Shown one piece after another: positions 21,087 to 63,619 of a stretch of DNA of 64,000 bases (positions are counted from its first letter, which is position 1; each line of letters begins with the position of its first letter). Below the pieces are notes generated by a model, which saw nothing but the letters and a program-made list of their open reading frames with translations, did no database searches and had not been told where the DNA came from. The translations under genes were made by a program, and so were the position numbers. This stretch comes from Selaginella moellendorffii (Eukaryota; Plantae; Lycopodiophyta), in contig NW_003314278.1 of the NCBI RefSeq assembly GCF_000143415.4, forward strand, positions 1,562,362 through 1,626,361, in the 5' to 3' direction.

Positions 21087-21442
21087 GGGTGGTGCCAGAG
21101 GGGCCACCCAAGGAAGTGCTCAAGAGCAGCTCCCACTCCCAAAAGGGAAACTGACTGTGGTGCTCTCGGCTCATGTGAAGTGGTGCCCCACTTGAGTATT
21201 TTGTGGCTCATTAGTCCTCGCCCTTCCCTTCGGGATAGAAGTGGTGGATTTATCTCCCAAGGTCTCGGGTGGTGCCAGAGGGGCCACCCAAGGAAGTGCT
21301 CAAGAGCAGCTCCCACTCCCAAAAGGGAAACTGACTGTGGTGCTCTCGGCTCATGTGAAGTGGTGCCCCACTTGAGTATTTTGTGGCTCATTAGTCCTCG
21401 CCCTTCCCTTCGGGATAGAAGTGGTGGATTTATCTTCCAAGG
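21087..21442. repeat. 180-bp near-perfect tandem duplication
   Basis: 21087..21262 repeats at 21267..21442, almost identical. Confidence 0.95.
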
Positions 21443-44071: not shown

Positions 44072-44166
44072 AATGTAAATTCTATGATGATTGAACAATT
44101 CAATGTTATATTGTGCTTGATCTTCACTCACCTTTTTGTTGAAAAATGTATATTAAACATGTTTAT

Positions 44167-45159
44167 TTACAGTTTGTAAGCTTCAATAACTTGCTCCTTG
44201 GACGGAACGTTCAAGAGGGAAACGTTGCCAAAGCCACTTTTTTCAAGCAGCACCTTGTGTTCTTCAAATCGCCTGGTCTTGCCACCGTCGGTGTAGGTCC
44301 AGCCCCGTCCTTGGAGTACATAAGGTCGACCACTATCATCTTGCCTCCTCGTGGCAGAGCTTTGTTGCAATTCGCCAGCATCTTCAGGCAATCCTCGTCG
44401 CTAAAATTGAGCAAAGTAGACTGAAGAAACACCAATGATCAAAACAAAGAGCAAGAGTTACAACCTTGATAAAAAGAGCATCAGCACTTGGTACACTCTC
44501 AAACATATTTCCTCCCACCTGGAAAAGCATAAAGACATGGAGGAATCAGAAACAAAACTTCAATCCTTACCGGGAATGGCTGGAGCGCTCTCAACAGTGT
44601 GAGGGAGATCAAAGTTGACACCTTCGATGTGGGGATATTTCTCCACGATCTTGCCCATGCACATTCCAAGGCCACCATCCACGAGCTTCTTCGCGTCTTT
44701 GAATCCATCGTAGTGCTCGTGGACGAGGGAGATGGTGACGCTGCTCCACGCGAACATAGGATCGTTGAGCAGCTTCACGTACTCGTCGCTGTGGCCGGTG
44801 TCGTGCTCCCAAACACGACATTTGTTGGCAATCTCGTAAGCGTGGCCTCCATTCAGCACCACCTTTAGGACGTGCACCTTCAGCACCATTCAGCACGTGC
44901 GTGCATAGCAGCAGGTGATGATGCTCCTCCGCAAGCCCCTTGGAGATTGGAGTGAGGCCGTAGTACGTTTCTCCATCTTTCTCGTCGATCTTCTTGCTCA
45001 GTGCCCGCTTGTGGACCAGAAACTGGAGGAGTCTCTCGAGGAGATCCGGCTGACAGTTCTTCGCGTTCGAGAGACGTGACACGACAGCGAGAAGATCATG
45101 CTCTTGAGATCAAAGTGGCCTTGAGCATCTTCACTCATGGTGTTAGATCCAGGCACCAT
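44167..45159 (-). pseudogene. O-methyltransferase pseudogene (cassette copy)
   Basis: Highly similar to 46142..47275 but with deletions and frameshifts (VDGGLG lacks VG; exon 1 and exon 3 deletions). Confidence 0.9.
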
Positions 45160-45325
45160 ACCCTACTGATTCTGAAAGGACGAGAGTAAATGAAAACCTT
45201 CTTTAAGACTGGTTGAAATGTCACTTCCCTGTCTACTGTATTTTAAGGTCCACGCTGCCAGAACAGCGTGACAAAGTCGGAAAATATCCTTGCGTGACAA
45301 AGTCAAGGTCGCAAAAACTATATCT

Positions 45326-45585
45326 TCATCGGGATTTCACCATCAATAAATATGCTCCTGCAACAATTTGATCATCATCAAGCTCCAGCAGTGACTTGAA
45401 TGCTAGCTGCCCAACGCTAGTAAAACTGAGACGAAAGTAATCCAAACGCTTCGTCTTGCATCTTTTTAAAGAGGCTGAAAACTTCGTGAGGCTGCTAGAG
45501 CGTTTTACCATGTCTTCTCCGGGCGTAGAGTCGAAGACCAACCTAGAGCTTCATTTGTTTCATCCCCAGTTCTGCAAATTTTTGT
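45326..45585 (-). pseudogene. Deleted copy of the 3' end of the PPR at 47420
   Basis: VFDSTPGEDMV..GQLAFKSLLELDDD..AYLLMVKSR matches the PPR C-terminus. Confidence 0.85.
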
Positions 45586-46141
45586 CACCGGCGCTCAAGA
45601 AAGTAAAATAAAGTCAATTCAAAGTGAACATAGTCAATTCAAGTCAAGTCAAGGCACCAAGTGTATGAAATATGGAAAGGGAATACAGAAAATGTATTTG
45701 AGGCCATGTTGTGTTGAAAGATCTATAAAAAAATGTAAGTCTTAGCTACTGCAAAATAATCAAACAAGGAAACTGCTGCAACATCTCTATCATTTAGCAA
45801 TGATCGATGTAAGACGATGAAATGACACACTCTTGATTCGAGCAAACATCACCATATCCATATGCTATAGTTGTCACAAAAGTTAAGCAGAAGTTGACAT
45901 ACCAAGCACAAAATCTGCTCCATGGCGTCGGTCACGCGTCCAGAGTGCGGAATTCTTCATGGCATCGTTACTTTAGGCCACCTATCCCCAAGCGGCAAAA
46001 TCTCCAGGAAGAATATTATCCAAGCCTCAAACTCTTTTATTTTTATCGATGATGCTCGCTTCAACACTGGAGCAGTCCATATTGTCAACGGTGACAATAA
46101 ACTCTAAAATACAACCAGCACAAACATCTCATTCACTTTGT

Positions 46142-47275
46142 TTAGAGCTTGTAAGCTTCTATAACTTGCTCCTTGGAAGGAACGGCCACGAGGGAAACGT
46201 TGCCAAAGCCACTGTTCTCGAGCAGCGCTTTGTGTTCTTCAAATCGCCTGGTCTTGCCACCGTCTGTGAAGCCGATCATAATCATGTCCAGGTCCATCTC
46301 GAATGGTCCCTCCTTGGAGTATATGAGCTCGATCACTATCAGTTTGCCTCCTCTTGGCAGAGCTTTGTAGCAATTCGCCAGCATCTTGAGGCAATCCTCG
46401 TCGCTAAAATTGATCATAACAGACTGAAGAAACACCATGACGATCACAACCTCAAGGAAAAAGAAGACAGAGTACCTTGATAAGAAGAGCATCAGCACTT
46501 GGTACACTCTCAAACATGTTGCCTCCCACATGAGCAACACCTGTTAAGAAAAAAACATGAAGAAATCAAAAGAAGATGTGTCTTGAATCTTACCGGGAAA
46601 GGCTGGAGCACTCGAAACGGTGTGAGGGAGATCAAAGTTGACACCTTCGATGTGGGGATACTTCTTCACAATCTTGCCCATGCACATTCCAAGGCCACCG
46701 CCAACATCCACGAGCTTCTTCACGTCTTTGAATCCATCGTAGTGCTCGAGGACGAGGGAGATGGTGACGCTGCTCCAAGCGACCATAGCATCGTTGAGCA
46801 GCTTCACGTACTCGTCGCCGTGGCCGGGGTCGTGCTCCCAAACACGACATTTGTTGGCCAACTCGTAAGCGTGGCCTCCATCCAGCACTGCTTCATTCAC
46901 CTTTTGGAACGCGGCCATGCCATACTCGTGCGTGCACAAGAGCAGGAGATGGTGCTCTTCCGCGAGCCACTTTGAGATTGGAGTGAGGCCGTAGTACGTT
47001 TCTCCATCTTTCTCGTCGATCTTCTCGCTCAGTGCCCGCTTGTGGACCAAAAACTGGAGGATTCTCTCGAGGAGGTCCGGCTGAATGTGCTTGACATTTG
47101 AGAGACGTGACACGATCTGCTTGAGGGAAAGCGGGCCTGCCTTGGAGATCATCTCGGGAATCCCGAGCAGCACCACAGCCTTGAGCATGAAAGGAGTCAC
47201 CAGCGAGAAGATCATGCTCTTGAGATCAAAGTGGCCTTGAGCATCTTCACTCATGGTGCTAGATACAGGCGCCAT
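46142..47275 (-). CDS. COMT-like SAM-dependent O-methyltransferase homolog with non-canonical active site, 3 exons, ~342 aa
   Basis: Dimerisation domain, LVDVGGGLG, NFDLPH, GGNMFESVP, DxDMxM. Two GT-AG introns. KSVMINFSD replaces KWILHDWSD and GGKTR replaces GGKER. Confidence 0.9.
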
Positions 47276-47419
47276 ACTGCCTTCTGCTTCTGAAGGATGA
47301 GAGCAAATGAGAGCCTTTTTAAGCCTTGAAATGTCACTTCCTTGTCTAGTGTATTTTAGATGGACCTTGCCAGAACAGCGTGACAAAGTCCTAAAGTCAA
47401 GGTTGTAGAAACTATATCT

Positions 47420-50284
47420 TCATCGGGCTTTCACCATCAATAAATAGGCTGCTGAAACATCTCGATCATCACCAAGCTCCAGCAGTGACTCGAACGCTAG
47501 CTGCCCGATGCTCGAGTTTTTCCACTTGCCACAAGCACCTAGCACAGTCCTCCAAGTCAGTGAACTCGGCTCAAAAGGCATCCTTCTCACCATGGCAACA
47601 GCCTCATCCAGCCGGTTGGCTCGGCCGAGAAGATCAACCACGCAGTGGTAGTGATCAATGTCGGGTTTTACACCATACTTGGACATCATTTCCTCAAAGT
47701 AGCGAGTGCCTCGCTCGACAAGGCCAGCATGACTGCATGCCGTCAAAACTGAGACAAAAGTAATACCATCAACTCCAAGAGCTTCGTCTTGCATCCTGTG
47801 AAAGAGACCGAGAACCTCGTCAGAATCCCCTTGACGAGCGTAAGATGCTAACAGAGCGTTCCAGCTTACCATGTCTTCTCCGGGGGTAGAGTCAAAGACC
47901 AGCCGAGAATTAATCGTGCTTCCACACTTGCCATACAAATCCACCAAGCAAGCAGCTACAACTTCATCGTTTTCATCCCCAGCTCTGCAAATTTCTCTGT
48001 GGAGCCTTCTCCCTGTTTCCAAATCCACCTGATTGCTACAGGCCTTAAGAGCAGCGGCGAAAGTTTGCGCATCAGCTGAGTAGAGCTTCTCGTTTTCCTG
48101 GAGCTCAAGGTATAACTTGAGAGCAAATTCTTCCTTACAATTCTCGGCATAACCGAGAATTAACGTGTTCCAGGAGACGAGATCATGGCACGGCATCCTG
48201 TCGAAGACCATTCTGGCATCGAGCATATTTCCACACCGCGCATATAACTCCACCAGGGTGCTGCTAACAAAAAAGTCTACCTCCCAGCACCCGGCTGCTG
48301 CTTGAGAATGGATAGCCATGCCTCTGTCTAGAGCTCGTAGCTTCACAGCCTTTCCATCGTCGACATGCTTCCCTGGCTCTCCTACTGCAAGAGCAATGCA
48401 TGCGTTCAATGCAGCAACATAAGACTGCGCGTCGGGCTCAACTCCCATGACTGAGAAAAGTTCCAGGGCCAGTTCTTCGTTCCCGTTCTCCACGCAGCCG
48501 GCCATCAAAACAGTCCACGAAACCACGCTGTGAGAAGACATCCTGTCGAATGCCCTGCGTGAATCTTCCGAGCTCCCACACTTTGCATAAGTGTCCACGA
48601 GCGTGTTGTCGAAGAAGATGCTCGAGTCCAAGGAGTACCTCAAAGCTTGCGAGTGAACCATCATCGTTTTCTCAAGAGCCTTCAGCTTGCTGCCTGGTAG
48701 ACAATTCTCGGCTAGTCTCCCACAAGCTCTGATTGCAGCAATGAAAACCCCCGAGTCTGGCTCGCAACCTTTCGGCTTCATGAACTCGAAAACTTCCAGA
48801 GCCCGGCTTTCTTCTCCATTCTCAGCATAAGCCAGGATCAAAGTAGTCCACGCCACAACATCAGGATAACTCATCTCCTCGTAGGCTCTCCATGCATCAA
48901 CCAAGCTTCCACACTGAGAATACATCTCGACCAAAGCAGATCCCAGGAATGCATCCCTGTCACAGCGCCCCGCTAAGCCATGAACTTCACGGCCCTTCTC
49001 CAAAGACCTCACCTTCACCAGCTTTCCATCAAGTTTCCTCGCCTGTTCTTTGGCTGCCAAGTTGCTACAAGCCTTCGTTGCAGCAACAAACGTTCGAGAA
49101 TCGAGCTCGCAGAAACCATCCATAGACTTGAAAACAGCAAGAGCCAAATCTTCCTCATCGTTTTCCACATAGCCGAGGATGAGTGAGTTCCACGATACCA
49201 CATTGCTGGAGTCCATCTTGTCAAATATCATGCGTGCATCCAGCAGGCTACCACACTTCCCATACATGTCCACAAGGCTGGTTGCCAGAAAACTCTCCGA
49301 GATCCAGCCAGTCTTGACGGCTTCACAGTGAACCGACATTCCTTTCTCCAGAGAAGCTAGTTTGACGAGTTTTGTGCCAGCGACGATCTTTCCCTCTTCT
49401 TTCAAAGCCAGACTCGTGCAGGCCTTCACAGCCACTGACAACGTTCGAGCATTTGGAGCGCACCGCGCGTTCTCTTTCATGGACGCCAGAAGTTCCAGTG
49501 CCAGATCTTCCTCTTCGTTCTCGACATATCCCAGCATCAAAACTGTCCAGGCCACGACGTCCGGCGAGCTCATCCTGTCAAAGACTGCCTTCGCATCGAC
49601 CAAGCTCCCACACTTCGCATACATCTCCACCAGGCTGCTACAAACGAAAGCATCCCCCTCGAATCCAGTGCTCGCTGCTTGCAAGTGAAGAGCCCTGCCC
49701 CTCTCCAGACTTTTCACCTTCCAAATCTTTCCATGGAGTTCTCGATATCTTTCTCTCGACGCCAGCCCCGCGCACGCCTTGAGAACAGCAGTGAAAGTCC
49801 GCTCGTTTGGAGCACAGCCTTCCTGTTGCATGGTAGAAAAGAGAGTGAATGCCAAATCAATTTCCCCATTCTCGGCATACCCGGCAATCATAGTAGTCCA
49901 CGAGACAACGTCGCGAATCGTTGGCATGGCATCAAACACGGCCCTCGCGAGCGCCATGCTTCCACACTTCGCATACATATTAATCAGGCTGCTGGCCACA
50001 CGAATGCTGCAAGAATCATGCCTGGATTCGATGGCATGAGCGTGGATAATCGTCCCGGCCTCTAAATCTCTCAAGCTGCTGCACGCTTTCAGTGCGAAAA
50101 TCACAACAGGGACCACATCCGGCTCCTCGTGACCCACACGCTACAAGAAGATCATGAAGCACGCATCATCGAGGGAGAAAATCAAACTTACAGCTTCTTT
50201 CTCTTGGAGCGCCATCGCGAAGAGCGAATGTGGATGCCGAGAGACCCGGATCTGAAAGAGAGATCGATCACAGCGTCGCAGCAT
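47420..50284 (-). CDS. Long PLS PPR (P-L-S triplets with elongated L motifs, E-type); in-frame TAG near the 5' end, so possibly a young pseudogene
   Basis: 905-codon PPR frame preceded in the same frame by ORF 50141..50335, separated only by TAG at 50143..50141 (FL*RVGHEEPD). Start position approximate. Confidence 0.8.
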
Positions 50285-50376
50285 GCCATAATTCTGCCAG
50301 GATTCTTCGAGTTTTTGGAGCCCTAAATCTTTCACCTGTTATTTATCAGTTAGCGGATTTAATATAGGGTTCTAAG

Positions 50377-51741
50377 ATGTCTAGGCTCGTTCTCGGTTGG
50401 TTTTGCGTTGTTGCTTTGGGAGCGTCACTACTTTTGCTATCACTTACTGAATCAAATCCACCAGTGCAGCAGAGAGCACGAATTCACAATTGTCACTTCT
50501 TGGGTAACCAAACATGTCCCTCTTATTTCAACTGGATAGAACATGATCTTGCACCATGGAAGGGTGGAATAACTAGGAAAGCTCTTGAAGCTGGCAAGGA
50601 GAAGGCTTATTTTAGGGTGATCATTCTGGGTGGTAAGCTATACACTCAGACATACAAGCAGTGCTTTCAAACCAGGGCTGAATACACACTCAAGGGATTG
50701 GCAATGTTGTTGAATGAGTTCCCTGGAATGGTTCCTGATGTGGATATTATGTTTAATTGCCAAGACCATCCTCTCGTTCCCAGATGGCGTTACCTCTTCA
50801 CATCACCTCCCCCTGTTTTTGGGTATTGCACAACAAGAAATCGGCATTATGATATTGTCTTTCCAGATTGGTCTATATGGGGATGGTAAATTCTCTAGTT
50901 TAATAATGTTTTTTTGTTAATTTTCTTTGCAGGCCAGAAGTAAATATCCCTCCTTGGAGCATTGAGAGTGAAAGAATCTTTACGGAAGCCGAAAAGATTG
51001 ATTGGTTTAGAAGAAAACCTATTGCATATTGGAGAGGAAATACGCAAATGGGACTAATAAGGTCTAATCTGGTTAAGTGCAACTCTACAAATATACTAAT
51101 TCAACATCAGGTATATAAATCTATAATTATCAACTTATTATATTGATTTGTTTTTTCAGGATTGGATTACAGAAGAAAAAGCCAATTTCACCAATTCTGA
51201 TTTGTCTAACCAGTGTTTCTCAAGGTAAGATTTATTTATGTGTAACAGTTAACTTATATGAATTCTAGATATAAAATCTATGCCGAAGGCAATGCTTGGT
51301 CAGTGAGTTTGAAGTATATATTGTCATGTGGATCAACAATGTTAAGGATTGAACCATATTATTGGGATTTCTTCTCAAGGTCTTTACTTCCACATGTTCA
51401 TTTTCTACCAATTACTAGAGAAAATATTTGTGATTCTATTCAAGAAGCCATACAATGGAGTAATTCAAATATCTATGAGGTTGGTTTTTTTAATATAATT
51501 GTATTTAATTTTAACAAATTCCTTTACTTAAAAGGCTGCTATGGTTGGAAAATGTGCTCAGAATTTTTTGAAAGAACAACTCTCAACAGATTATGTATAT
51601 CAATATATGCTACATATACTTCAAAGGTATGCAAAATTACAAAAGTTTAAACCAGTATTAGTACCAGGAATGAAATATACTCATTCATATATACCTATGA
51701 ATGAAAATAATCAAAAGAAAATATTATGTTCTATTTCATGA
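50377..51741 (+). CDS. Glycosyltransferase family 90 (CAP10/Rumi-like), multi-exon
   Basis: N-terminal TM anchor, CPSYF.WIEHDLAPW, CFQTR, VPDVDIMFNCQDHP, DIVFPDWSIWGW|PEVNI, AYWRGN, YKIYAEGNAWSVSLKYILSC, VYQYMLHIL..YAKL. 3' end uncertain. Confidence 0.88.
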
Positions 51742-52169
51742 ATAAGAAGAACTTAAATATACATATTTAGAACTATAAAAGTAACCGCAGATGGTGAGCG
51801 AGGAAACGTGTCGCTCTGGCGCCCACAACCAAACCACATCCACTACAAAGGACAAGGTGAGGAATCCAGCACTCGCGTCCATCCACAAGCAAGCAGGGCA
51901 ATGCCAGCTGAAACAGGACCATCCACTACAAGGGACAGGCAGACAACATCGATGCTGACGAAATTGGATGACAAATAGACCAATTGTCACACTTGCATAC
52001 TTGAATCCATTGGTGTCATGCTTCTTGGTGGAAACCTTGTAAACAAGTAACATGAATGAATGAATGAATTTAGAGGTAAAAAAACATAACAAAAAAGGAC
52101 AATTGGATCAGGACATAATGATGATTCGAGACCGTTGGACTTTAACATATCCTGCTTTTATAGCTCCAA

Positions 52170-54335
52170 TCCGGAAACTCTCCAGGTGAAATCTTGTGGA
52201 TTTGATCTATGACCATGCACTAGGCGCGCATTTTCGAGCACGGCTGCGATGTAATATTGATTGCCAAGGAGAGGAATGGAGAAGGTTTGGCGTCACCATC
52301 AGGCGGCTCTGGAGAACTACATCACCCCAGAGCATATGACGTACTAACATTATTGACAAATACGTGATAGATAGAAATGGTTGTTTGAGTGTGGCTCAAC
52401 TGTTTTTTTCAGGCTTGGATTGAAAAAGCAAAAGCTAAAAGCTGAAACTACTTGCCAAGGACGGAAGAACACCGTGAGTTTGCCAGCCTCTTCAAGCAAA
52501 CGTCCTGATAGAAAAGGACTCATTTGTTTGCTTTTGGTGCTTGTCGTCTTACCACGCCGTCTTCTAGAGAAAGGTGCTCTCAACGATTTTTATGTGAACG
52601 TGATAGTGACGGCAAATTGATCTTTTCAATGGCCGAGACAATGAAGTTGCAAAGAGTTGTAGAGATTCTAGCAAGAAGAACTCCCATCTTACTTGGAGAG
52701 CCTAGTGTTGGCAAGACAGCGATTGCTGAAGGCCTTGCCATAGAAATGTTCCAGAGTTTCTCACGGTGAGTGGATTTTTGTAAATTGTGGTGAAGTTTAC
52801 ATGTTTCTGCTGGCACATACAGGAGAACCGAGCGCTGTCTCTGGATATGGAATTGTTTGCTGGAGCTAGAGAGCGTGGTGAATTGAGCAGCAGGTAAAGT
52901 TGTTTTTTGGTTTGTTTATACTTAGAATGATATATCTAATAATGCTTGATATCACAAGGCAACGTTATACTTCTAGAGACGAAGTCCATACGCTCGTTGG
53001 CTCAGGCTTTGTTGGCGGAAGAGGTGGAAATAAAGGGGCAGGCTTGGACATTGTGAATTTATTGAAGCCTGCATTAGCGAGAGGCGAACTTCTGGTAAAG
53101 ATTAAAAAACTTCACTTCTAGGATTATGTTTGCTTAGTCCTTCAGTGTATAGGTTCGACGAGCATAGAAAACACATAAAAAAAATAAGCGAGGAGGTTTC
53201 AACCTGTTCTTGTAAATGAACCTCGTCAGGTTTGTGTTGCTACTTGGTTTATGAAGTCGTTGACTATTTTTCTGGTTTGCAGGAAGACTGTGACGACTCT
53301 TAAAGAATACGTGATATATATGAAGAGTATCACAAATGTAAAATTACACCAGAAGCAGTTGATGCTGCTGTATATTTGTACACCGATGACAGAGCAAGTG
53401 ATTTGATCGACGAGGCTGGCCCATATGATGCATTTAAGCGCAGGAAAGACAAGCGAGCCGGAAAGCTTCCCAAGAAGTACTGACAAGCACTTCGTGTGCT
53501 CGCAAGTGACTTTTTTTTTGGTTTTAACAATTGCCTTTTCAGGCCTTTCTTCCGCAAAGTTCTTCGGAGTATCTTATTGGAAGTGCTGCAAACACGTTAT
53601 AACAGAAGGCTGTATATATCGACCAAGAGTCAATTTCGTTACCAGTTAATGAACAAATGGAAAGGTACTTTTCTTGTTCTTCGTCTGTGAAGCTTTGTTT
53701 TTCGTCTGCAGCTCGAAGATAGTTGGACCACGTCCATGGACGCAGTGAACGTCATATCGCGAGCAGCTCCCAGGGCACAAGTCGGACTCAAGGATTCAGA
53801 TTGGCCGATCGCTACCATGCTCTGTTGTAGGGAAAACGAAGCTTACACAAAAGCTCTATGTGAAAACGCCTGTGAATGCTTTACCTGTGAATCGGGTGAG
53901 GCTCCAAAAGCTTGTTGAAGATGTCTTTCTCGATTTTGTAGAAGAGGATAACAGTGAAGAACCTTGAACGCTGAGAGAGGCTGTTTGCAAGACACTCACC
54001 ATCCGGGAGAACAGATAAGCTTGCTCACGATATATGGCAGCCTCATGTCCAACCTTATCATGGCGTCCTCCTGAAAGAAAAAAAGTCTGTTATGTACATG
54101 CATATGAAAAGAGTTACGGCTCCAACAAAGTGTCTCTTTCAGGAACAATGACATCTAACATTGGCTCCTCGGGGAGTAAGCAGCAAGATCAGGCAAAGGT
54201 GGTGACGAAATAGACGAAGAAGAGACTCTCTCACCTGGTGAATGTCATAAGGAATGAGCATCTTAACCTTTGTTGTAGCCCTCGTTGCAAACCAGCTTCA
54301 CCAGATTGACACCTGGCCAGCAACAATGGCATGGA
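52170..54335 (+). pseudogene. Scrambled, intron-retaining ClpD pseudogene, inverted relative to the parent gene
   Basis: [25 protein letters not shown] and [27 protein letters not shown]. Intron sequences match 35.9-38.2 kb. Many micro-deletions and internal inversions. Confidence 0.92.
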
Positions 54336-54344
54336 TCCAGCACC

Positions 54345-56950
54345 ACAGTGCACTGATATAGGATCTTTGAACACACTCACTTTGAGGCACTCAAGATATT
54401 AAAAGAAACACACTTGTTCAAACAAAAGAACACACATCCACAAATGAATATGAGCACACTCCAATTTAAACCATATTTAAGATGCCTGTAAGTAACAAAA
54501 CACTTTCTACTCTAAAACATACTCCAAGAAACACTATTAGATATAAATCCTTAAGAGGTGGGGTGAAGCCTAGCTTAACCCCTATTGCTCCCACTTTTAT
54601 TCTCCAGCTGATTTTTAGGATCTTAAAATCCTCTTTGCATGTGCTTGTATTGTTTAAACATTGGAAATAGTTAAAGTTTAGTGGGATCTAAATTAACAAA
54701 GTGAAAGAACCATCATAAATGATTCAATGAATCTTTAAGTTGGGGGTTCTATACTCTTTAGAGGATGTGCATGATGTTGAACTATTGACAAATAATAGTT
54801 TGGTGCAAAAGATAAAATAATAATTTATGATGAGATTACTTCAAAAAATATGTTATCGTTTGATGAGAATATCGAACTTCGTTTATGGGTGATAGAGTTA
54901 AGACATAAATCCCTAAGTCCTAAAATAGAGTTAAATGTATGATTGTTAAATGTTGAATGTAACATGTTTGAATTGAAAGCTCTAACTTGAGAAGTTAAAA
55001 GTAAGAATGGAACTCTTAAAGACATACTTGAAAAACAAATATGAAATAATTAATAAATGAGTCTTTAGAAATGAACATAACACATGATTAGTGTCGAGAC
55101 CAAATGTGAGACCACATCTTAGATTGTCTTCAAGATTAAGTCTAAGATTAAGTCCGAAATCAAGTGTAACATATATAGTTTTCATCCTTTATCACCATCG
55201 GATAACCATAAAGTGGAACTTAACCCTTAGATATATAGGCCAAAGGCAATAGAATAGAATCCAAGTTTTAAAGCTTTAGACCATTGAATAAAGGGATAGA
55301 GTAAACTTTTAAGCATATAGCTAAAAAGCAAAAGAATTAAAACATCAAATAACTCTTGAAACTTTTATTAAAAGTTATTTTGTGCTCTAGTTCCTTTGCT
55401 CCTTATTTGAACCAATATAGTTATGAAAGGCTAGTGTATATGAATATTGAGGAATTCAAGGCTAAAGTGAACATAGATAGACAAATAGGATGACTTAGTG
55501 AAGTGTCTAAGAGTCAACTCTAACTACTTCGGGAGATCGAATAATCAATACTCTCAATTTAAATATAGTGTAAGCAATTAAATTTTCTATTCTACTATAG
55601 TCTCATATTTAACCACTTAGAGGAATCTTACTCACAACCTCAATAAGTTTTATTCTTGACTTGGGGATATGCAAGTCTATGAATGGCATTTATGCCACTT
55701 AACTTTTGCATTTGGTCCAAGTGCAAGTTCCACTGATCTTTGGGACTTCCTCACTATGTGACCATGCCTTTGGTTATTATATAAAAACATTTTTGCTCTT
55801 CCTTTCCACAGATTAGAACTTTAGGATGACATTTCGAAATACTGTGGTCCTACATAAGCCTTGTAAGTACTCTCCCCACCATGGTCTTACATGAGCCTCT
55901 TGGACTTTTTTTCGGACACTTTCTTAAACTCTATCTCGAACTTTATCTTAGACTCTTTGACACTTCCATATGTCATAACACTTACCATGTGTCAGTCTTT
56001 TTTGTGTCCTTTTCAAAAGACTTATTTATCGATCGCTTCGTGCTCATTCCTAAAGCACTTCATTTGGAGTTCTATTTTTGCTTTCAACTTTCCAAATTTG
56101 AGTTTTTGGTCCAAATGTGTTATACTCATTGGACTTCACTTTAACCACTGCCATGTGGCACACTTTTAGCTCCACTTTGGGGCCTAGGGATTTGTGTGTC
56201 ACATATGGGTAGCACTACCTATTTAGATACCTTATGTTGCTCATTGAAACCTCACTTATCCATATGGTTAAAACACCCTAATGGCAGAAGGTGGGGAGAG
56301 TACCTATAAAGCTCTCATTGGCTGTGATGTTATCATCCCAAAATCTCTAACAATGGAAAGGGAGAGGAGTGGCCCTTTTATGTAGTAACTAAAGGTATAG
56401 TTACATAGTATAGAAAGTTTTAGAGATTAGTGGGATTTAGTGGTTAGGTTGTTGGGCACTAATCTAGTGTAGTGTTGGTGAGCACTACTAGGGATGAAGA
56501 GGGACTTGGCAGGAATTAAAGAAATGATAATGGGGGATATTGTTCCTTATGTTTTAAGGCATCTTTATAAATGTTAAAAAGTGGTTATAGAATGACTATT
56601 TATAAATGGAAGGTTTAGTCTTGGAGAGATGGGACAGTAGTAAAGGTGGTATTAGATTACCAATGAGATAGTGAGGATGGTATCTTCAACTATCTATAAT
56701 GCAACTAAATACATGGAGCACTTGAATTAAATACTTTGTTAGTGTGGGTTTTGAAATCACCTTTAGAGGCTAGAAAGTTTCTTAAGTTAGAATAAGGATT
56801 TACAAAGGTTGTGAGTGAGACTCTTCTAAGTGGTCAAAGATGTCACTAACTGACTAAAGTAGAATGAAAAATTTAATTTCTTACACACTCCTACTTTTTG
56901 TTAAGATTCAATACAAGAATCAAGGTGATAATAAGATGGCTAATACATTA
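54345..56950. mobile_element. Highly degraded AT-rich retroelement remnants
   Basis: TGTAAGTAAC at 54487 resembles the terminus at 20654. Degenerate 12-bp repeats at ~55090..55165 and ~55900..55960. Inverted pair of gag zinc-knuckle-like remnants. Confidence 0.5.
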
Positions 56951-57289
56951 TCATGATGATGAAGGATGATGAATTCTATCATGCAAGAAAGCCATTTTGC
57001 TTTCTTTCTTTTGTGGCTATTTGTTGTGACATTAAAGTTGTTATTTGCACATCTTTTTTCCATGGACATATTGACTTAAACTTCCTTTATATAAAGCTCA
57101 TTTAGCTTCTTAAGGCTATCATTTGTGGCTAGTTCATGAGGGAGGGGAGAATGATAGGAACCACAAATTTTTTTTAAGAATATTTTATAACATGTGGGAT
57201 TTAAAGCCATCATGCCTTTAGGGTTGGGAAATTTGCCTTCAAAGGTATAAGTTAGTGTGCCTATTATGCAATGCAATAGGATTGTGAAA

Positions 57290-58140
57290 AAGCATGAGTG
57301 ACAAAGTGGGAGGTGAAGAAGATATATTTTCTCACAATGGCTCAGAAGTGTGGGGATGCAAACTCTCTAAAAAGCAGTGGGGAAACCTGGAAAACATCAC
57401 ATCGACTTTCATTTTGGACGAACTCGGCATCTCCATCAAAACAGCACTCCTCATCCCCTTCATGGAAGCCAATCTCTTCCCACTGGAGATCATGCCATGG
57501 CAACATACAATCCAATACCTCTACAAAACTCACTTTACCATATGGCAAGCTCATGGATCAAGCAATTCTTGACTCTCAGTGGCATGACATGGAGACGTTG
57601 ATGCAGAAGTTTGGCATGGATCTCAATGACATTCTCAGCGCACTTGAAGAGGATCTTGAACAATAGTCGAACAAAGCAATGCACACATGGATACATGCCA
57701 GAGAACACTTGACTAAATATCACCTTTATTGCCAGGAGATAAACCCACACAAAACTTTTGGATTGGGCATGGACCAGACACACCATCACCCGGTACCACA
57801 CAAGAATCCACAGCCTCTTGATCGAACTTAGATGCCGTGGACAGGGAGAACTTCCATGACATTTTCAAATCTGCCCAGTCTGCACAGAAGACACAGAGAC
57901 GGTCATGCACACACTCAAGGCTGGCCCTCCCTATGCCGAATTCCACTCCCAACTGGGGCGCTGAAACACATATAATCCTTGAAGACAACCTCATCCCTCG
58001 CCAATTACCTGAAACGCATGGAGCTGTGATGTCAAATGCATATCACACCTGCAGTGGAGGCAACCATAATCAAAGACCTCGAATGGCTGAGGAAAAGAAG
58101 ACGGGTAGGCAGGGCTCGTGAGCAGGAGTATAATAACAAT
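57290..58140 (+). mobile_element. Degenerate non-LTR (LINE-like) retrotransposon fragment
   Basis: GSEVWG..W..LE.I...FI...LG....T......E..LFPL resembles the post-RT thumb region of LINE ORF2. Frames are broken. Confidence 0.5.
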
Positions 58141-58475
58141 GAGACACCATTGACGTGGCAGTATTACATTTTACAAAACTATCAAAATAACATATAGATA
58201 TTTAAGTAGATAGATAGAAAATAAAATCACTTAAGAGTGTACTTACACAAAGGTACTGTAAGACTTCAATAAGATGTCGCCATGGCCATATCATCTGAAG
58301 ATAGAACAAATTAAGTTCCATGGTTCTATCAAAGCGAGAACTTACATTTCCATGAGAACTGTGGCTTGGATTGTGAACGTGACCCATAGTGGCTGCATGA
58401 ACAAATCCAAGACGTCCATCGCATATTATAGATATCTGACGAAAAGCGTCCGTAAATCAAAGAAGCTGCGCATTG

Positions 58476-60295
58476 ATGACCACGCGATCAATTGATCTTC
58501 TCGAGCAGCAAGGCTACCATGCCGATCTCCAGCTCTGCCTCCAGCTCGTCAAATCTTGCAGTCACTCCAGGGATCTCTCGCAAGCAAAGAAGCTCCACTC
58601 CCAGATCCTTGGAACCAAACACTCGCGCAATCGGCACCTGGAGAACCTCCTCATCGAGATGTATGGAAAATGCGGGAGCCTGGAGCGCGCGCGCGCTGTT
58701 CTTGATGATCTGGAGGAGCCAAACATCTTCTCCTGGAATATTTTGCTCACGGCCTACATCGAGCGCGGGCATCTGGAACAAGCCAAGGAGATCTTCGCCA
58801 GCGAGATGCCACAGCACAACACCGTCTCCTGGACCGCGATGCTCACCGCGCATTCCCAGAGCGGGAATTTCCAAGATTCCTGGGGCCTGTTCCAATCGAT
58901 GCCCCGGCGCAACACCATCGCCTGGAACGCGATGATCGCTGCCTGCGGCCACCACGGCCGCGTCGCCCTAGCCCGATTGCTCTTCGACGCCACGCCCGGG
59001 AAGAATATCGCGTCCTGGAATGCGATGCTAACGGCATATTCCCAGAACGGGCACATTCCCGACGCGAGAAGGATCTTCGACTCCGTGCCGTACAGAAGTA
59101 CGGTCACCTGGAACGCAATGTTGACGGCATATGCGGATGCCGGGCACGTGGCGGGCGCAGGGGCGGTGTTCGTTGCGATGCCCGATCGCGACCACGTGTC
59201 TTGGAACACGATGATCCAGGCGTCCGTTATGGCGGGAGAATTTGAGCTAGCGAAAGAGCTCTTCGCGGCAATGCCAGAGAAGGATTTGATCGCGCAGACC
59301 ACCATGATCGTCGTGTGTTCCCAGATTGGGGATCTTGGCCAAGCGAAGCGTGTGTTTGATGCGATGGAGCGGCGAGATATCGTCGCCTGGAATGCAATGC
59401 TTCAATCGTTTGCCAGTGCCGGGGATTTCGATCGAGCCATGGAGCTCTTTGAGAGAATGCCCGAGAGAGATGTGGTGTCGTGGACGGCAATGCTAGTGGC
59501 GTATGCCGAGAAAGGGCTCCTGGATCACGCAAGAGCTCTCTTCGATTCAATGCCTCACAGGAGTCTCGTCGCCTGGAATGCCCTGCTAGCTGCGTATTCC
59601 AGATCTGGGCATTTGGAGGAGGCCGAGAGATTCTTCCATCAAATGCCTTCATGCAATGTGATCTCTTGAACCACACTCTTTCAAGCATATGCCCTAAATG
59701 GGCATCTGGACATGGCGGCTTTAATCTTCGACTCTATGCCCGAAAGGAACACCGTGTCTTGGTCCGTGCTGATCCAAGCATACGCAAGGCACTCGCGTTT
59801 GGATCTAATCGAGCGCGCGTTTTGGCGGCTGGAAGATCAAACAGTGGTAGCCTGGTCATCGATCATTCAGGCATTTGCCCAGAAGGGGCATGGCCAGCAA
59901 GCGCTAAATCTCTTCCGGCTCATGGAGCTAGACGGTGGAGCCTCGCCCGACGAGATCACATTTGTAGGAATCCTCACGGCTTGTGGCCATCTGGGCGATC
60001 TCAAGGAAGCGTTGCGGCAATTCTATTCCGTCACCACAGACAGGAAAAATCTCGCGATCACCGCCGAGCACTACGGCTGCTTGATCGACATTCTTGCTCG
60101 TCTTGGGCATCTGGGCCCGATTTGTTTGAGAGCATGCCCTTCGTCCCGGACCGTGCCGCTCGGATCTCTTTGATCTCCGCTTGCAAACTCCACAAGGATT
60201 CTCGGCGAGCAGTCAAAACCACCGAGCGAGCGATCAAACAGGATCCAGGACACGCTTCTTCATATGTGCTGCTCTCAAACACCTACACCCAGTAG
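58476..60295 (+). pseudogene. PLS PPR pseudogene
   Basis: TGA replaces the conserved Trp (NVIS*TT) at 59667..59669 and the frame continues. A short deletion near 60115 shifts the E region (LFESMPFVPD..LISACKLH..YVLLSN) into another frame. Confidence 0.88.
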
Positions 60296-60349
60296 ATCAT
60301 GAAGTTCTCCGTTAGAAAAGCTTTTGATCGATGTGACAAACCAAAGTAC

Positions 60350-61332
60350 CTATTGGTAGAGCTGGAAATCTCTCAGCTGGAGCTTCCACCTGCCATCGCC
60401 AGTCGAGTGTGCTTGAAGAACATCCGCGCCAACCGAGGGCATTCCATCGAAATCTACGTGAAGAAGTAACACGAGCTCTTGCTTCGATGGCATGTATGGT
60501 TCTTCCCCGCCAGCATCGAATTCATCTTCTTCGCTGGTTTTCTGGACGGATCTCGCGGTGATGCTGTCTTTGATCAGCCTCTCGGATGTCAAGCTCAAAA
60601 CTCTCGTTCTGTCCATTCCTCTCAGCACGATCATCAAGTCCTTGCGACGAACAAGCGGGAGATCTTCGGTGGTCTGCAAGAAAGCATTGAATATCGAAAC
60701 GATGGAATGGAATTTCTCACACAAACCTGAGAAGAGGAGCTGGAAGAACTCGAGTTCTCACTTCCTGACGAAGTTGGCAGTGTCGGTTGCTCGTCACTAG
60801 GAGAGAGCTTCTGATCAAGGATAACCTTTCCTTCTTCTCCTTCTTCCTCTTCACTGGGAGCGAGCTTTGGATCAATGATAAACTTGCGAGGGACATACTC
60901 GACGCTCCAGCTCTCGGATTTGTAGAACGACGGCTTCTTCTTCTTGGATCTGTCCAGAGGCCTCGATCGGCCCATGAAGCCGGTTCCAGCGCCCTTGGAG
61001 ACGGCCTTGGCGATCTCCCGGACGAAGACGCATCCTCGCCCGTGCTCGCTCAACCCCCTCTCCGCCACCGATATCAATGCCGCCGCGCGCTCCGGATCCT
61101 CGCAGCACTTCTCAAACACATCGTCCCAGATGAGCATTCCATCCTCGAAATCCCTCTGCCTGCCCGAGGAGGAGGAGAACGAGGACGATGGCGGCGAGCG
61201 CTTCTTCTTCTCTTTCTTCTCCGTGGGAGATTTAGCCTGCGCTCTCACTGCGATGGAGGAGCCTGTCCATCCTGGGGCGAGATTGGCGCGAGGTAGAGGA
61301 GAGAATGCCGCTGCCATCGCCAAAGACGCCAT
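60350..61332 (-). CDS. Uncharacterised, probably plastid-targeted protein, 2 exons (61332..60727, 60673..60350)
   Basis: Ser/Ala-rich transit-like peptide ending VRA, an in-frame 53-nt GT-AG intron, and coding-like composition. Confidence 0.75.
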
Positions 61333-61406
61333 TTCTATCCAGTAAAACCCCAAGGAAGAGAGAAGACCCGATTCTAGATCTCTAAGATGCCCGTGGAGGG
61401 CACAAT

Positions 61407-61811
61407 CTACCTGGAAGAAGCAATAACCTCGAGGATCTTGTCAGCGAAACCCTTGAAATCCGGCAGATTCATGGCGGTGTCGAGATCTTTCTCCGCAGTG
61501 GCCGACGCATCGATCTTGCTCACGATCGCCTGGAGCTCCTCGTTCCTGAGCATGGCGCGGATCTCCTCCGACGCCGCCACCGCCTCGAGCTGCTGCCTCC
61601 GGAGCCTGGTTGCCATCTGCGATTCATCCCCATTCTCGAAATCCCGCGGCGGCTGCACGAGCTGGGCTTGCTCCTCCTCCTCTGCCGCCGCTACCTTCGT
61701 GCAGGGCGCCGCCTTGTGATCCTTGAAGCACTGCAGCGAGCAGTAGGGCACCAGGCAGCCCGGGCATTTGTACTTGGAGACCGCGCCACTGCAAATGCCG
61801 CACTGGCTCAT
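61407..61811 (-). CDS. HIT-type zinc finger protein (ZNHIT3/Hit1-like snoRNP assembly factor), intronless
   Basis: CGIC....SKYKCPGCLVPYCSLQCFKDHK..C and C-terminal S.EIR.ML....LQ....ID..F..FADKIL. Confidence 0.88.
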   Translation of the reverse strand: MSQCGICSGAVSKYKCPGCLVPYCSLQCFKDHKAAPCTKVAAAEEEEQAQLVQPPRDFENGDESQMATRLRRQQLEAVAASEEIRAMLRNEELQAIVSKIDASATAEKDLDTAMNLPDFKGFADKILEVIASSR

Positions 61812-62049
61812 TGCCCTAGATCCAATAAGAAACATAACCATGTTTATAAACTTTGTTATATACTAGCTTCGTGTGAATGGTGCCCAGAAGTACGCATGTA
61901 AAGAGTGCCTGGTTGAGTAGACGATAACGATTCCGAAACATCTGCCAATCTGATGGAAAGGATGCGTCTTCTTCCTCACTCTTGTTTGCTGTTCGTCTCC
62001 TTTCAGGGGCGATCAGCCAAGGGGCGAGCGAACGGTGACAATGGGCAGC

Positions 62050-62341
62050 GGCAGCAATCAGCAACGATCAGCCCAGGGGTAAAGGTAAATTCCACACTTG
62101 CTGGTCACTCCACCGCCACCATGGTTAGTGCTAATGCAAAGGAGCAGGAGACCTCTCATGCTAACTTTCGGAGGGTGTGTTTCAATGCTTGTAGATTTGA
62201 CTTTGCTGGAGGACTGTGCTAGGTGCTTGTGGCAAGTGGAAAAATGCAAGCATTGGGCAGCTAGCGTTTGAGTCACTGCTAGAGCTTGGTGATGATCGAG
62301 ACGTTGCAGCAGCCTATTTATTGATGGTGAAAGCCCGATGA
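62050..62341 (+). pseudogene. Copy of the 3' end of the 47420 PPR upstream of the inverted OMT
   Basis: WRTVL.ACGKWK..SIGQLAFESLLELGDDRDVAAAYLLMVKAR* is nearly identical to 47420..47560. Confidence 0.85.
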
Positions 62342-62490
62342 AGATATATTGTCACGCAAGGATATTTTCCGACTTTGTCACGCTGTTCTAGCAGCGCCGA
62401 TCTTAAAATACAGTATAAAAGAAGTGACATTTCAACCAGGCTGAAAGAAGGCTCTCATTTACTCTCATCCTTTCAGAAGCAGAAGGCAGT

Positions 62491-63619
62491 ATGGCGCCTG
62501 GATCTAGCACCATGAGTGAAGATGCTCAAGGCCACTTTGATCTCAAGAGCATGATCTTCTCGCTGGTGACTCCTTTCATGCTCAAGGCTGTGGTGCTGCT
62601 TGGCATTCCCGAGATGATCTCCAAGGCAGGGCCGCTCTCCCTCAAGCAGATCGTGTCACGTCTCTCAAATCCCAAGAACTGTCAGCCGGATCTCCTCGAG
62701 AGAATCCTCCAGTTTCTGGTCCACAAGCGGGCACTGAGCGAGAAGATCGAGAAAGATGGAGAAACGTACTACGGCCTCACTCCAATCTCAAAGTGGCTCG
62801 CGGAAGAGCACCATCTCCTGCTCTTGTGCACGCACGAGTATCCCATGGCCGCGTTCCAAAAAGTGAACGAAGCGGTGCTGGATGGAGGCCACGCTTACGA
62901 GATGGTCAACAAAGTTCGTCTTTGGGAGCACGACCCCGGCCACGGCGACGAGTACGTGGAGCTGCTCAACAAGGCTACGCTCGCATGGAGCACCGTCACT
63001 ATCTCCCTCGTCCTCGAGCACTACGATGGATTCAAAGACGTGAAGAAGCTCGTGGATGTTGGCGGTGGCCTTGGAATGTGCATGGGCAAGATCGTGGAGA
63101 AATATCCCCACATCGAAGGTGTCAACTTTGATCTCCCTCACACCGTTTCGAGCGCTCCAGCCTTTCCCGGTAAGATTCAAGACACGTTTTCTTTTGATTT
63201 CTTCATGTTTTTTCTTAACAGGTGTTGCTCATGTGGGAGGCAACATGTTTGAGAGTGTACCAAGTGCTGATGCTCTTCTTATCAAGGTACTCTGTCTTCT
63301 TTTCCTTGACGTTATGATCTTCGTGGTGTTTCTTCAGTCTGTAATCATCAATTTTAGCGACGAGGATTGCCTCAGGATGCTGGCGAATTGCTACAAAGCT
63401 CTGCCACGAGGAGGCAAACTGATAGTGATCGAGCTCATATACTCCAAGGAGAGACCATTCGAGATGGATCTGGACATGATTATGATCGGCTTCACAGACG
63501 GTGGCAAGACCAGGCGATTTGAAGAACACAAAGCGCTGCTCGAGAACAGTGGCTTTGGCAACGTTTCCCTCGTGTCCGTTCCTTCCAAGGAGCAAGTTAT
63601 AGAAGCTTACAAGCTCTAA
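62491..63619 (+). CDS. COMT-like O-methyltransferase homolog with non-canonical active site, 3 exons (62491..63169, 63222..63286, 63338..63619), 341 aa
   Basis: Intact spliced frame of 1026 nt. Close paralog of 46142..47275, with KSVIINFSD and GGKTR. Confidence 0.92.

What the first reader, a model, noticed from the sequence alone, without database searches (positions are those of the whole stretch)
46142..63619. Amplifying COMT-like family that keeps SAM binding but has lost the methyl-transfer catalytic residues
Seen: two intact genes (46142..47275 and 62491..63619) and one pseudogene keep the SAM motifs LVDVGGG.G, DLPH and GNMF. All read KS[V/T][M/I/L][I/L]NFSD at the start of exon 3 and GGKTR near the C-terminus; the pseudogene has STLLNFSD. 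Established: COMT-type plant OMTs have KW.LHDW, where His is the general base, and a supporting Glu in GGKER. Both are replaced here (H to I/L, D to N, E to T) in every copy while the reading frames are preserved. Inference: these are not ordinary phenolic OMTs. They could be SAM-dependent non-methylating enzymes (analogous to fungal OMT-fold pericyclases), base-independent methyltransferases, or pseudoenzyme/heterodimer partners in lineage-specific secondary metabolism.
Basis: partly seen in the sequence, partly recalled or inferred. Interest (0 to 1): 0.8.

Follow-up and report, generated by a model that had tools for sequence, protein, structure and literature searches.

The report
Methyltransferase look-alikes missing their catalytic pair
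Two expressed spikemoss (Selaginella moellendorffii) genes here, plus a third elsewhere in the genome, encode proteins built like plant phenol O-methyltransferases that keep the pocket for the methyl donor SAM but have replaced the His-Glu pair that does the chemistry with greasy residues, so they probably do something other than ordinary O-methylation; what that is has not been tested.

Summary
The window is Selaginella moellendorffii. Gene A (47275..46142, minus strand, 342 aa) and gene B (62491..63619, plus strand, 341 aa) are intact three-exon class-I plant OMT-fold genes (Pfam Methyltransf_2 plus Dimerisation). A broken copy lies at 45159..44167, just outside the stated span.

Aligned to solved OMTs, the catalytic His is Ile and its Glu partner is Thr. 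In the canonical OMT of the same species (SmOMT, PDB 9WAM), H259A and E319A each abolish activity.

RNA reads and contigs from four studies splice gene A exactly as modelled, and no alternative joint restores HDW. Reads with B-diagnostic letters show that B is expressed too.

A 63%-identical paralogue on another scaffold (gene C) has Leu and Val/Ile at the same two positions. All six alleles on the two haplotypes are intact. dN/dS is about 0.2 for A/B versus C and 0.26-0.39 for A versus B. The SAM contacts are conserved, while polar substrate contacts have become Phe, Cys and Phe.

So this is a selectively maintained, dyad-less, Selaginella-specific clade. Its actual activity is unknown.

The scan's note s1-358725 flagged the same family on other DNA of this genome.

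The parts
46142..47275 (-). Gene A: intact 3-exon OMT-fold gene (342 aa; exons 47275-46594, 46540-46476, 46423-46142; RefSeq XP_002971724.2, auto-named '(R,S)-reticuline 7-O-methyltransferase')
   Evidence: Both introns are confirmed by RNA joints: 46424-46475 in 17 reads and 46541-46593 in 14 reads, plus contigs from three other studies. Pfam PF00891 and PF08100 match.
46412..46414 (-). Gene A codon Ile253, at the position of the catalytic His (MsCOMT His269 / SmOMT His259)
46250..46252 (-). Gene A codon Thr307, at the position of the Glu that partners the catalytic His (MsCOMT Glu329 / SmOMT Glu319)
62491..63619 (+). Gene B: intact 3-exon OMT-fold gene (341 aa; exons 62491-63169, 63222-63286, 63338-63619; RefSeq XP_002971518.2, auto-named 'anthranilate N-methyltransferase')
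   Evidence: Expression is inferred from B-diagnostic letters in RNA reads laid on gene A. AF2 model has pLDDT 95.3.
63347..63349 (+). Gene B codon Ile252, at the catalytic His position
63509..63511 (+). Gene B codon Thr306, at the dyad Glu position
44167..45159 (-). Pseudogene copy, 86.5% identical to gene A over the aligned bases. It has several frame-breaking deletions, including 6 nt inside the VDVGGG motif. It still reads STLLNFSD and GGKTR. It is essentially untranscribed.
   Evidence: RNA depth is at most 0.37 in two bins and zero elsewhere.

Best explanation
Genes A and B, with paralogue C on scaffold GL377628 (its allele on GL377603), form a Selaginella-specific clade of class-I (COMT-type) plant OMT-fold proteins. 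They are transcribed, correctly spliced and kept by purifying selection.

They retain the dimerisation domain and the SAM/SAH-contacting residues. They have replaced the His-Glu catalytic dyad with Ile/Leu and Thr/Val/Ile. They have also replaced the polar substrate contacts of the canonical enzyme with Phe, Cys and Phe.

Shown: the substitutions, the splice, the expression, the selection and the clade.

Inferred: they cannot carry out general-base-assisted phenol O-methylation. Instead they use bound SAM in a now hydrophobic pocket.

My preferred mechanism is methyl transfer to a hydrophobic acceptor that needs no enzymatic base, such as an amine, a thiol, an activated carbon or an already ionised group. 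In other words, a neofunctionalised methyltransferase rather than a dead one.

I put the 'functional, not a canonical OMT' part at about 0.85 and the specific 'base-independent methyl transfer' part at about 0.4.
For: - Dyad loss: PDB alignments, the family alignment and mapping on SmOMT numbering.
- In SmOMT of the same species, H259A and E319A each abolish activity (PMC12955871). The Glu partner is described as perfectly conserved in BIA OMTs (PMC6730481).
- No alternative splice: RNA joints match the model in raw reads and in contigs of three further studies. Intron 2 of gene A is 52 nt, so it must be removed to keep the frame.
- Expression: depth 5-23 across gene A exons in 12% of run X24. 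The contigs have word depths of 42-254. Letters diagnostic for the other gene A allele and for gene B are present.
- Selection: NG86 dN/dS is 0.19-0.21 for A/B versus C (dS about 1.4, p<1e-16 against neutrality) and 0.26-0.39 for A versus B (p 0.0005-0.0045). All six alleles are intact.
- SAM site: S174, G198, G200, L222, M242 and K255 of SmOMT are identical in A, B and C. F153W and H167N are shared with the His-bearing sister P0044. D241 is N in A/B and D in C.
- Of the columns that are at least 80% conserved in the family, the ones changed in the clade cluster at the dyad and the pocket.
- Fold: AF2 pLDDT 95.3 and TM 0.92 to LpOMT1 3p9i.
- Clade: A/B/C are monophyletic (99-100 SH-aLRT) and sister to the canonical-His P0044.
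Against: - No biochemical data exist.
- Retained SAM motifs could serve only folding or dimer stability, so a non-catalytic role fits equally well.
- N-, S- and C-methylating members of this family that I know of keep the His. The N-methyltransferase RgANMT keeps His270.
- No obvious biosynthetic neighbours were seen. The called genes beside the other-haplotype A/B copies and beside gene C include PPR genes, PLATZ, GT90, an alpha/beta-hydrolase, ClpB, an amine-oxidase-like protein and a lectin receptor kinase.
- No orthologue outside S. moellendorffii was found, so conservation across species is untested.
- dS of 1.4 is near saturation, so the 0.2 ratio is approximate.
- The former Glu position varies (T, V, I), which suggests it is now only loosely constrained.
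Confidence: 0.45

Rival explanations
1. Pseudoenzyme. The protein is a catalytically dead OMT-fold subunit that works through binding. It could be a heterodimer partner that shapes the active site of a canonical OMT, as each monomer's N-terminal helices line the partner's pocket. Or it could be a small-molecule or SAM/SAH-binding protein.
For: - Both dyad residues are gone.
- The PF08100 dimerisation domain is intact.
- There is a precedent for OMT heterodimers with activity that neither homodimer has: PsSOMT2 with PsSOMT3 or Ps6OMT (PMC6730481).
- Canonical-His sister paralogues exist in the same genome: P0044/P0186 and P0048.
- Purifying selection and expression fit this reading as well.
Against: - The SAM-contacting residues remain conserved over a dS of about 1.4.
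- The pocket has been coherently remodelled, with Phe23, Cys113 and Phe300 identical in A, B and C and with clade-specific His108 and Lys141. This looks more like a new ligand site than relaxed decay.
- In the poppy case the partner subunit is itself an active OMT elsewhere (Ps6OMT can substitute).
Confidence: 0.3
2. A SAM-dependent enzyme that does not transfer the methyl group. SAM would act as a bound cofactor or charge for a cyclisation, dehydration, decarboxylation or hydroxylation. Fungal LepI/FinI and bacterial RdmB and SlnM work this way.
For: - The OMT fold is kept, the SAM site is kept and the catalytic His is replaced. This is the same evolutionary signature described for LepI, where Arg295 aligns with the OxaC His313 of a His-Glu dyad (PMC10491745).
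- The remodelled pocket is hydrophobic.
Against: - The His is replaced by inert Ile/Leu rather than by a catalytic Arg.
- No candidate acid/base could be placed in the site.
- I found no plant example of such an enzyme.
- There is no cluster context.
- The known cases lie in microbial biosynthetic gene clusters.
Confidence: 0.1
3. Still an ordinary phenolic O-methyltransferase, with another residue taking over as base. Candidates are the clade-specific His108, Lys141, Tyr136 and Cys113.
For: - His108 is conserved in A, B and C and absent at that column in the rest of the family. Lys141 sits at a Gly that is 93% conserved.
- HMMER places His107-His108 about one helical turn before the pocket residue Cys113.
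- The retained acidic residue at the MsCOMT Glu297 position (E/E/D) could partner a new base.
Against: - All polar contacts that hold the phenol in SmOMT (T22, N121, H259, Y313) have become apolar together.
- The H259A and E319A single mutants of SmOMT are dead.
- The alignment around His108 is ambiguous because of a 7-residue deletion.
Confidence: 0.1
4. Young duplicates drifting towards pseudogenes. The frames would be intact only by chance.
For: - One local copy is already a silent pseudogene.
- A versus B dN/dS of 0.26-0.39 is less strict than for many core enzymes.
Against: - The dyad loss predates the A/B-C split (dS about 1.4), yet six alleles at three loci are intact.
- dN/dS of about 0.2 is far from 1.
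- Transcripts are abundant and correctly spliced in four studies.
Confidence: 0.03

Closest known systems
SmOMT / SmCOMT of Selaginella moellendorffii (PDB 9WAM/9WAN; P0246)
   Same: Same species and same class-I OMT fold, with an N-terminal dimerisation domain and a Rossmann SAM domain. About 35-37% identity. The SAH contacts S174, G198, G200, L222, M242 and K255 are identical.
   Different: SmOMT has the H259-E319 dyad, and both Ala mutants are dead. A/B/C have I/L and T/V/I there. The substrate contacts T22, N121 and Y313 are F, C and F in A/B/C. A/B/C also have a 7-residue deletion before the pocket helix and a 6-residue deletion after the beta-strand that carries the Glu297-equivalent.
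SmCOMT-like 3 (P0044/P0186, ADE88154 / XP_002971835.2), the nearest His-bearing paralogue
   Same: It is the sister group in both trees (support 91 and 96). About 43% identity. It already shares the 'KSV..N' context, W at SmOMT F153 and N at H167.
   Different: It keeps His (HNW) and Glu (GGQER). It is 398 aa with long N- and C-terminal extensions.
LepI-type SAM-dependent pericyclases (fungal OMT fold)
   Same: OMT fold with SAM binding retained and the catalytic His of the His-Glu dyad substituted (PMC10491745).
   Different: LepI substitutes Arg, which is catalytic, and uses His133. It is fungal and encoded in a gene cluster. Here the replacements are aliphatic, the host is a plant, there is no cluster, and the activity is untested.
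PsSOMT2:PsSOMT3 (or Ps6OMT) heterodimeric OMT of opium poppy
   Same: A plant class-I OMT in which one subunit contributes structure rather than catalysis to the reaction (PMC6730481).
   Different: The poppy partner subunits are not reported to lack the dyad. Heterodimer formation by A/B/C is untested.
Other dyad-less plant OMT-like proteins found here
   Same: - Diphasiastrum complanatum P0051/P0191: Met and Gly.
- Silene latifolia P0087: Gln and Leu.
- Calypogeia fissa P0117: Leu and Leu.
- Citrus sinensis P0103: Leu and Gly.
- One Beta vulgaris copy, P0059/P0192: Leu, with Glu kept.

   Different: - They sit elsewhere in the tree.
- A joint clade of the Diphasiastrum pair with the Selaginella clade is disfavoured (lnL lower by 12.5) but not rejected (AU p = 0.16).
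- None of them has a described function as far as I could find.

Membership tests
Plant class-I (COMT-type) O-methyltransferase, as a fold and homology family | Pfam PF00891 Methyltransf_2 domain | tested here: met
   E values from 6e-19 to 2e-15 on the exon translations of A and B, above the gathering score.
Plant class-I (COMT-type) O-methyltransferase, as a fold and homology family | N-terminal PF08100 dimerisation domain | tested here: met
   51-54 bits against a cutoff of 25.6.
Plant class-I (COMT-type) O-methyltransferase, as a fold and homology family | Overall 3D fold | tested here: met
   AF2 pLDDT 95.3. Foldseek TM 0.92 to LpOMT1 3p9i.
Plant class-I (COMT-type) O-methyltransferase, as an enzyme | SAM-binding residues: the glycine-rich VDVGGGxG motif, Asp of DLP, Ser174, Met242 and Lys255 (SmOMT numbering) | tested here: met
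   All are present in A, B and C. D241 is Asn in A/B.
Plant class-I (COMT-type) O-methyltransferase, as an enzyme | Catalytic general-base His (MsCOMT His269 / SmOMT His259) | tested here: not met
   Ile in A and B, Leu in C and in the pseudogene.
Plant class-I (COMT-type) O-methyltransferase, as an enzyme | Glu hydrogen-bonded to the His (MsCOMT Glu329 / SmOMT Glu319) | tested here: not met
   Thr in A and B; Val or Ile in the two C alleles.
Plant class-I (COMT-type) O-methyltransferase, as an enzyme | SAM-dependent O-methylation of a phenolic substrate | not testable with these tools
   Needs an enzyme assay.
LepI-type SAM-dependent pericyclase | Catalytic Arg at the position of the OMT His, plus an essential His133-type residue | tested here: not met
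   The position holds Ile/Leu, not Arg. I made no alignment to LepI itself, so the His133-type residue was not checked.
LepI-type SAM-dependent pericyclase | SAM is bound but not consumed, and the reaction gives an isomeric or dehydrated product | not testable with these tools
   Needs biochemistry.
Heterodimeric OMT partner subunit (PsSOMT3-like role) | Physical heterodimer with a catalytic OMT that changes its activity | not testable with these tools
   Only the intact dimerisation domain was shown.

The most novel reading that the evidence does not exclude
These would be the first plant OMT-fold proteins that use bound SAM without transferring its methyl group. Examples would be a cyclase, pericyclase, dehydratase or decarboxylase acting on a hydrophobic Selaginella-specific metabolite. 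That would be a plant counterpart of fungal LepI and bacterial RdmB.
Probability: 0.1. Interest if true: 0.85.

Novelty: new variant of a known kind. Interest (0 to 1): 0.55.

Why it matters
Plant class-I OMTs are annotated by similarity. These genes carry RefSeq names such as 'anthranilate N-methyltransferase' and '(R,S)-reticuline 7-O-methyltransferase'. That chemistry is unlikely for a protein lacking both residues of the dyad.

A dyad-less clade that is expressed, keeps its SAM pocket and has been under purifying selection since an old duplication is a concrete, clonable candidate for one of two things. It could be a new SAM-dependent activity in plants. Or it could be a dedicated non-catalytic OMT subunit.

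Similar double losses in Diphasiastrum, Silene, Calypogeia and Citrus suggest a recurrent and unstudied fate of OMT duplicates.

If it turns out to be a plain pseudoenzyme, the value is mainly a correction of annotation.

Tried and rejected
- **Alternative splicing restoring HDW.** Rejected. The only joints seen are the modelled ones, and neither intron encodes HDW.
- **D270-to-N as a catalytic loss.** Rejected. HNW is common in canonical relatives and in the His-bearing sisters.
- **Gossypium cluster P0079 as a His-less lineage.** Withdrawn. Most members read E-H-L, so a His sits one position later.
- **Orthologues in other species.** None was closer than about 40% identity in two word searches and the full HMMER search. 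Other Selaginella genomes may simply not be in these protein sets, so this is not evidence of absence.
- **Metabolic gene cluster.** The called genes beside the other-haplotype A/B copies and beside both gene C alleles show no evident pathway partners. The window's own neighbours were only listed as ORFs, not scanned for families.
- **Literature.** No paper in the searchable library names these loci or proteins. Searches for plant OMT pseudoenzymes or non-methylating plant OMT-like enzymes gave nothing specific.
- **Single origin with the Diphasiastrum dyad-less pair.** Not favoured by the tree, but not rejected (AU p = 0.16).
- **Placing a substitute base in 3D.** Not possible. The structure tool returns no coordinates, so His108, Lys141 and Cys113 remain untested candidates.

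Full report
**Identity of the window and gene models**

A word search with exon 1 of the plus-strand gene returned a 100%-identical 341-aa protein of Selaginella moellendorffii. This is P0001, RefSeq XP_002971518.2, automatically named 'anthranilate N-methyltransferase'.

Reading the DNA gives two three-exon genes with GT..AG introns:
- Gene B (+): exons 62491-63169, 63222-63286 and 63338-63619.
- Gene A (-): exons 47275-46594, 46540-46476 and 46423-46142.

The spliced translations are 341 and 342 aa and are 94% identical. Gene A equals XP_002971724.2. Both carry Pfam Methyltransf_2 and the OMT Dimerisation domain.

tblastn of the two proteins on the window finds a third copy on the minus strand at 45159..44167. 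This lies just below the finding's stated start.

**The observation**

Exon 2 ends with Lys. Exon 3 begins S-V-I-I-N-F-S-D in B and S-V-M-I-N-F-S-D in A. GGKTR lies near the C-terminus. VDVGGGLG, DLPH and GGNMF are all present.

HMMER alignments to solved plant OMTs place I-N-F under H-D-W and the Thr of GGKTR under the Glu of GGKER. The solved OMTs included bergaptol OMT 5xoh, SmOMT 9wam, LcCOMT 7v6j, MOMT 5cvv and 10ee.

In a 259-sequence alignment of full-length relatives, these two columns are His in 85% and Glu in 89% of sequences outside the clade.

The pseudogene reads S-T-L-L-N-F-S-D and GGKTR. Relative to gene A it has:
- an 85-nt deletion in exon 1;
- a scrambled stretch with a 2-nt deletion;
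- a 6-nt deletion inside VDVGGG;
- 9 nt missing at the intron 1/exon 2 border;
- two 14-nt deletions in exon 3.

H-N-W is found in about 46 of the 150 nearest cluster representatives, and in the His-bearing sister genes of the same genome.

**Splicing and expression**

RNA-seq raw reads (X24) and contigs from three other studies (X1, X5, X9) were laid on 44000-47600.
- Both gene A introns are removed exactly as modelled. 46424-46475 is skipped in 17 reads and 46541-46593 in 14 reads. Both joints are also present in all three contigs, two of which show no differences from the window.
- No other splice joint was reported. The only other joint is a back-join inside the X1 contig to 45441.
- Read orientation is uniform, as expected for a minus-strand transcript in a stranded library.
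- Intron 2 of gene A is 52 nt, so it must be spliced to keep the frame.
- Depth is 5-23 over the exons with only about 12% of the run read.
- The pseudogene is essentially silent, with depth at most 0.37 in two bins.

Sub-majority letters in the reads match positions diagnostic for the other haplotype's allele of A (46265, 46763) and for gene B (46386, 46661, 46670, 47265). So B is transcribed too, although its own joints were not examined.

The refuting condition 'another splice restores HDW' is therefore not met.

**Family, age and selection**

A paralogue on another scaffold has K-S-V-L-L-N-F-S-D and GGRVR. This is gene C (P0002, 338 aa, 63% identical, same three-exon structure).

The assembly holds both haplotypes. 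The second haplotype carries A, B and the pseudogene in the same arrangement, and it carries C as well. All six coding sequences are intact and all lack the dyad. The two C alleles differ at the former Glu position (Val versus Ile).

Nei-Gojobori dN/dS values:

| Comparison | dN/dS | dS | p against neutrality |
|---|---|---|---|
| A/B versus C | 0.19-0.21 | about 1.4 (near saturation) | below 1e-16 |
| A versus B | 0.26-0.39 | 0.065-0.084 | 0.0005-0.0045 |

The full HMMER search of 1.84 billion representatives and two word searches found nothing closer than about 40% identity outside S. moellendorffii.

In maximum-likelihood trees A/B/C form a clade with 99-100 SH-aLRT support. Its sister is the His-bearing 'SmCOMT-like 3' (P0044/P0186; support 91 and 96). 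Next come further His-bearing Selaginella OMTs.

The dyad was therefore lost once, before the A/B-C split, inside a Selaginella-specific OMT radiation. The proteins have been kept by selection since then.

**What changed in the protein**

The canonical OMT of the same species has been solved and mutated (PMC12955871).
- H259 and E319 form the dyad, and H259A and E319A are each inactive.
- SAH is held by F153, H167, S174, G198, G200, L222, D241, M242 and K255.
- The substrate contacts T22, N121, H259 and Y313.

Mapped onto A/B/C:
- H259 becomes I/I/L and E319 becomes T/T/V.
- T22 becomes F, N121 becomes C and Y313 becomes F, in all three proteins.
- S174, G198, G200, L222, M242 and K255 are unchanged.
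- F153W and H167N are shared with the His-bearing sister.
- D241 is Asn in A/B and Asp in C.
- The acidic residue at the MsCOMT Glu297 position is kept (E/E/D).

Among family columns that are at least 80% conserved, the ones altered in all three proteins include (SmOMT numbering; the conserved family residue is given) the catalytic His, the Trp after it, the dyad Glu, Trp130, Phe144, Gly149, Phe166 and Val225.

Residues shared by A, B and C but rare elsewhere include His108 (0%), Cys113, Lys141 (at a 93% Gly), Tyr136, Trp166, Thr218 and Asp292.

The AlphaFold2 model of B is confident (pLDDT 95.3, pTM 0.90). It superposes on closed-form COMTs with TM 0.92 to LpOMT1 3p9i.

Together this looks like a coherent remodelling of the acceptor pocket into a hydrophobic site with the SAM pocket preserved, rather than random decay.

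**Mechanism**

Shown: loss of both dyad residues, a retained SAM-site sequence, expression and purifying selection.

Inferred: general-base phenol O-methylation is lost. This rests on the established roles of His269/Glu329 (Zubieta et al. 2002, as summarised in PMC12013660, and PMC6730481) and on the SmOMT mutants.

I favour a neofunctionalised SAM-using enzyme that methylates a hydrophobic acceptor needing no enzymatic base (about 0.4).

The main rival is a non-catalytic dimer partner or ligand binder (about 0.3). The poppy PsSOMT2:PsSOMT3 heterodimer is the precedent.

The remaining readings are:
- a LepI/RdmB-like non-methylating SAM enzyme (about 0.1). LepI replaced the same His, but with a catalytic Arg;
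- an ordinary OMT with a relocated base such as His108 or Lys141 (about 0.1);
- neutral decay (about 0.03).

I could not place the candidate substitute residues in space because no model coordinates are returned.

**Wider pattern and novelty**

Other OMT-like proteins lack both dyad residues:
- Diphasiastrum complanatum, two paralogues (Met/Gly);
- Silene latifolia (Gln/Leu);
- Calypogeia fissa (Leu/Leu);
- Citrus sinensis (Leu/Gly).

One Beta vulgaris copy has Leu for His. An apparent Gossypium case was withdrawn because a His sits one residue later.

The tree places these elsewhere. However, a joint clade of the Diphasiastrum and Selaginella dyad-less proteins is not rejected (AU p = 0.16).

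No paper in the searchable library names these Selaginella genes or describes plant OMT-fold proteins without the dyad. A survey preprint scores the H-D-E pattern across streptophyte OMTs in general.

The scan's own note s1-358725 flags 'COMT-fold methyltransferases that lack the catalytic His/Glu pair' on another piece of this genome. Its length of 1126 letters equals that of the other haplotype's gene A. This agrees with what I found there.

**Verdict**

The cautious interpretation, 'not ordinary phenolic OMTs', is well supported. The function is open.

I rate this as a new variant of a known kind: dyad-less OMT-fold proteins, known in microbes as repurposed enzymes, found here as a selectively maintained plant clade. 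Interest is moderate.

Noticed in passing
window 47420-50137 (-), 62216-62341 (+), 45326-45541 (-): Each OMT copy is preceded by the 3' end of a PPR-type ORF ending in a near-identical '...LLELGDDRDV(A/S)AAYLLMVKAR' tail. The copy upstream of gene A is a 905-aa intact ORF. The A/B duplicated block (45990-47554 versus 63756-62207, 92.9% identity) reaches only about 280 nt upstream of the start codon, so it includes just the PPR tail.
   Followed up: partly
window 47276-47600: RNA contig X1 runs without a break from gene A exon 1 upstream to at least 47600. Raw-read depth there is 3-4. This means either a long 5' UTR or read-through from the upstream PPR gene on the same strand.
   Followed up: no
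window 63287-63337 versus 46424-46475: Intron 2 of gene B is 51 nt, in frame and free of stops, so retention would insert 17 residues right before the former catalytic motif. The gene A intron is 52 nt and shifts the frame if retained. The other haplotype's gene A allele also has 51 nt.
   Followed up: partly
L001:8001-9131 and L004:3001-4138 (gene C, two haplotypes): The two alleles of paralogue C differ at the former dyad Glu position (GGRVR versus GGRIR). They differ by 10 nonsynonymous and 7 synonymous changes overall. An amine-oxidase-like FAD gene lies immediately downstream on the opposite strand in both haplotypes.
   Followed up: partly
P0051 / P0191 (Diphasiastrum complanatum): Another lycophyte has two paralogous OMT-like proteins (380 and 382 aa) with Met for the catalytic His and Gly for the Glu, on a long stem branch. 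Common origin with the Selaginella clade is not favoured but not rejected (AU p = 0.16).
   Followed up: partly
window 21087-25368: There is a block of tandem repeats: 180 nt x 2 at 21087-21443, 155 nt x 6.1 at 22207-23151 (97% matches) and 145 nt x 3.3 at 24898-25368. They sit within a low-GC, repeat-rich stretch (about 12-31 kb).
   Followed up: no
window 36985-37936 versus 53379-52518: An inverted pair of about 0.9 kb at 82-84% identity, probably copies of a dispersed repeat or transposon.
   Followed up: no
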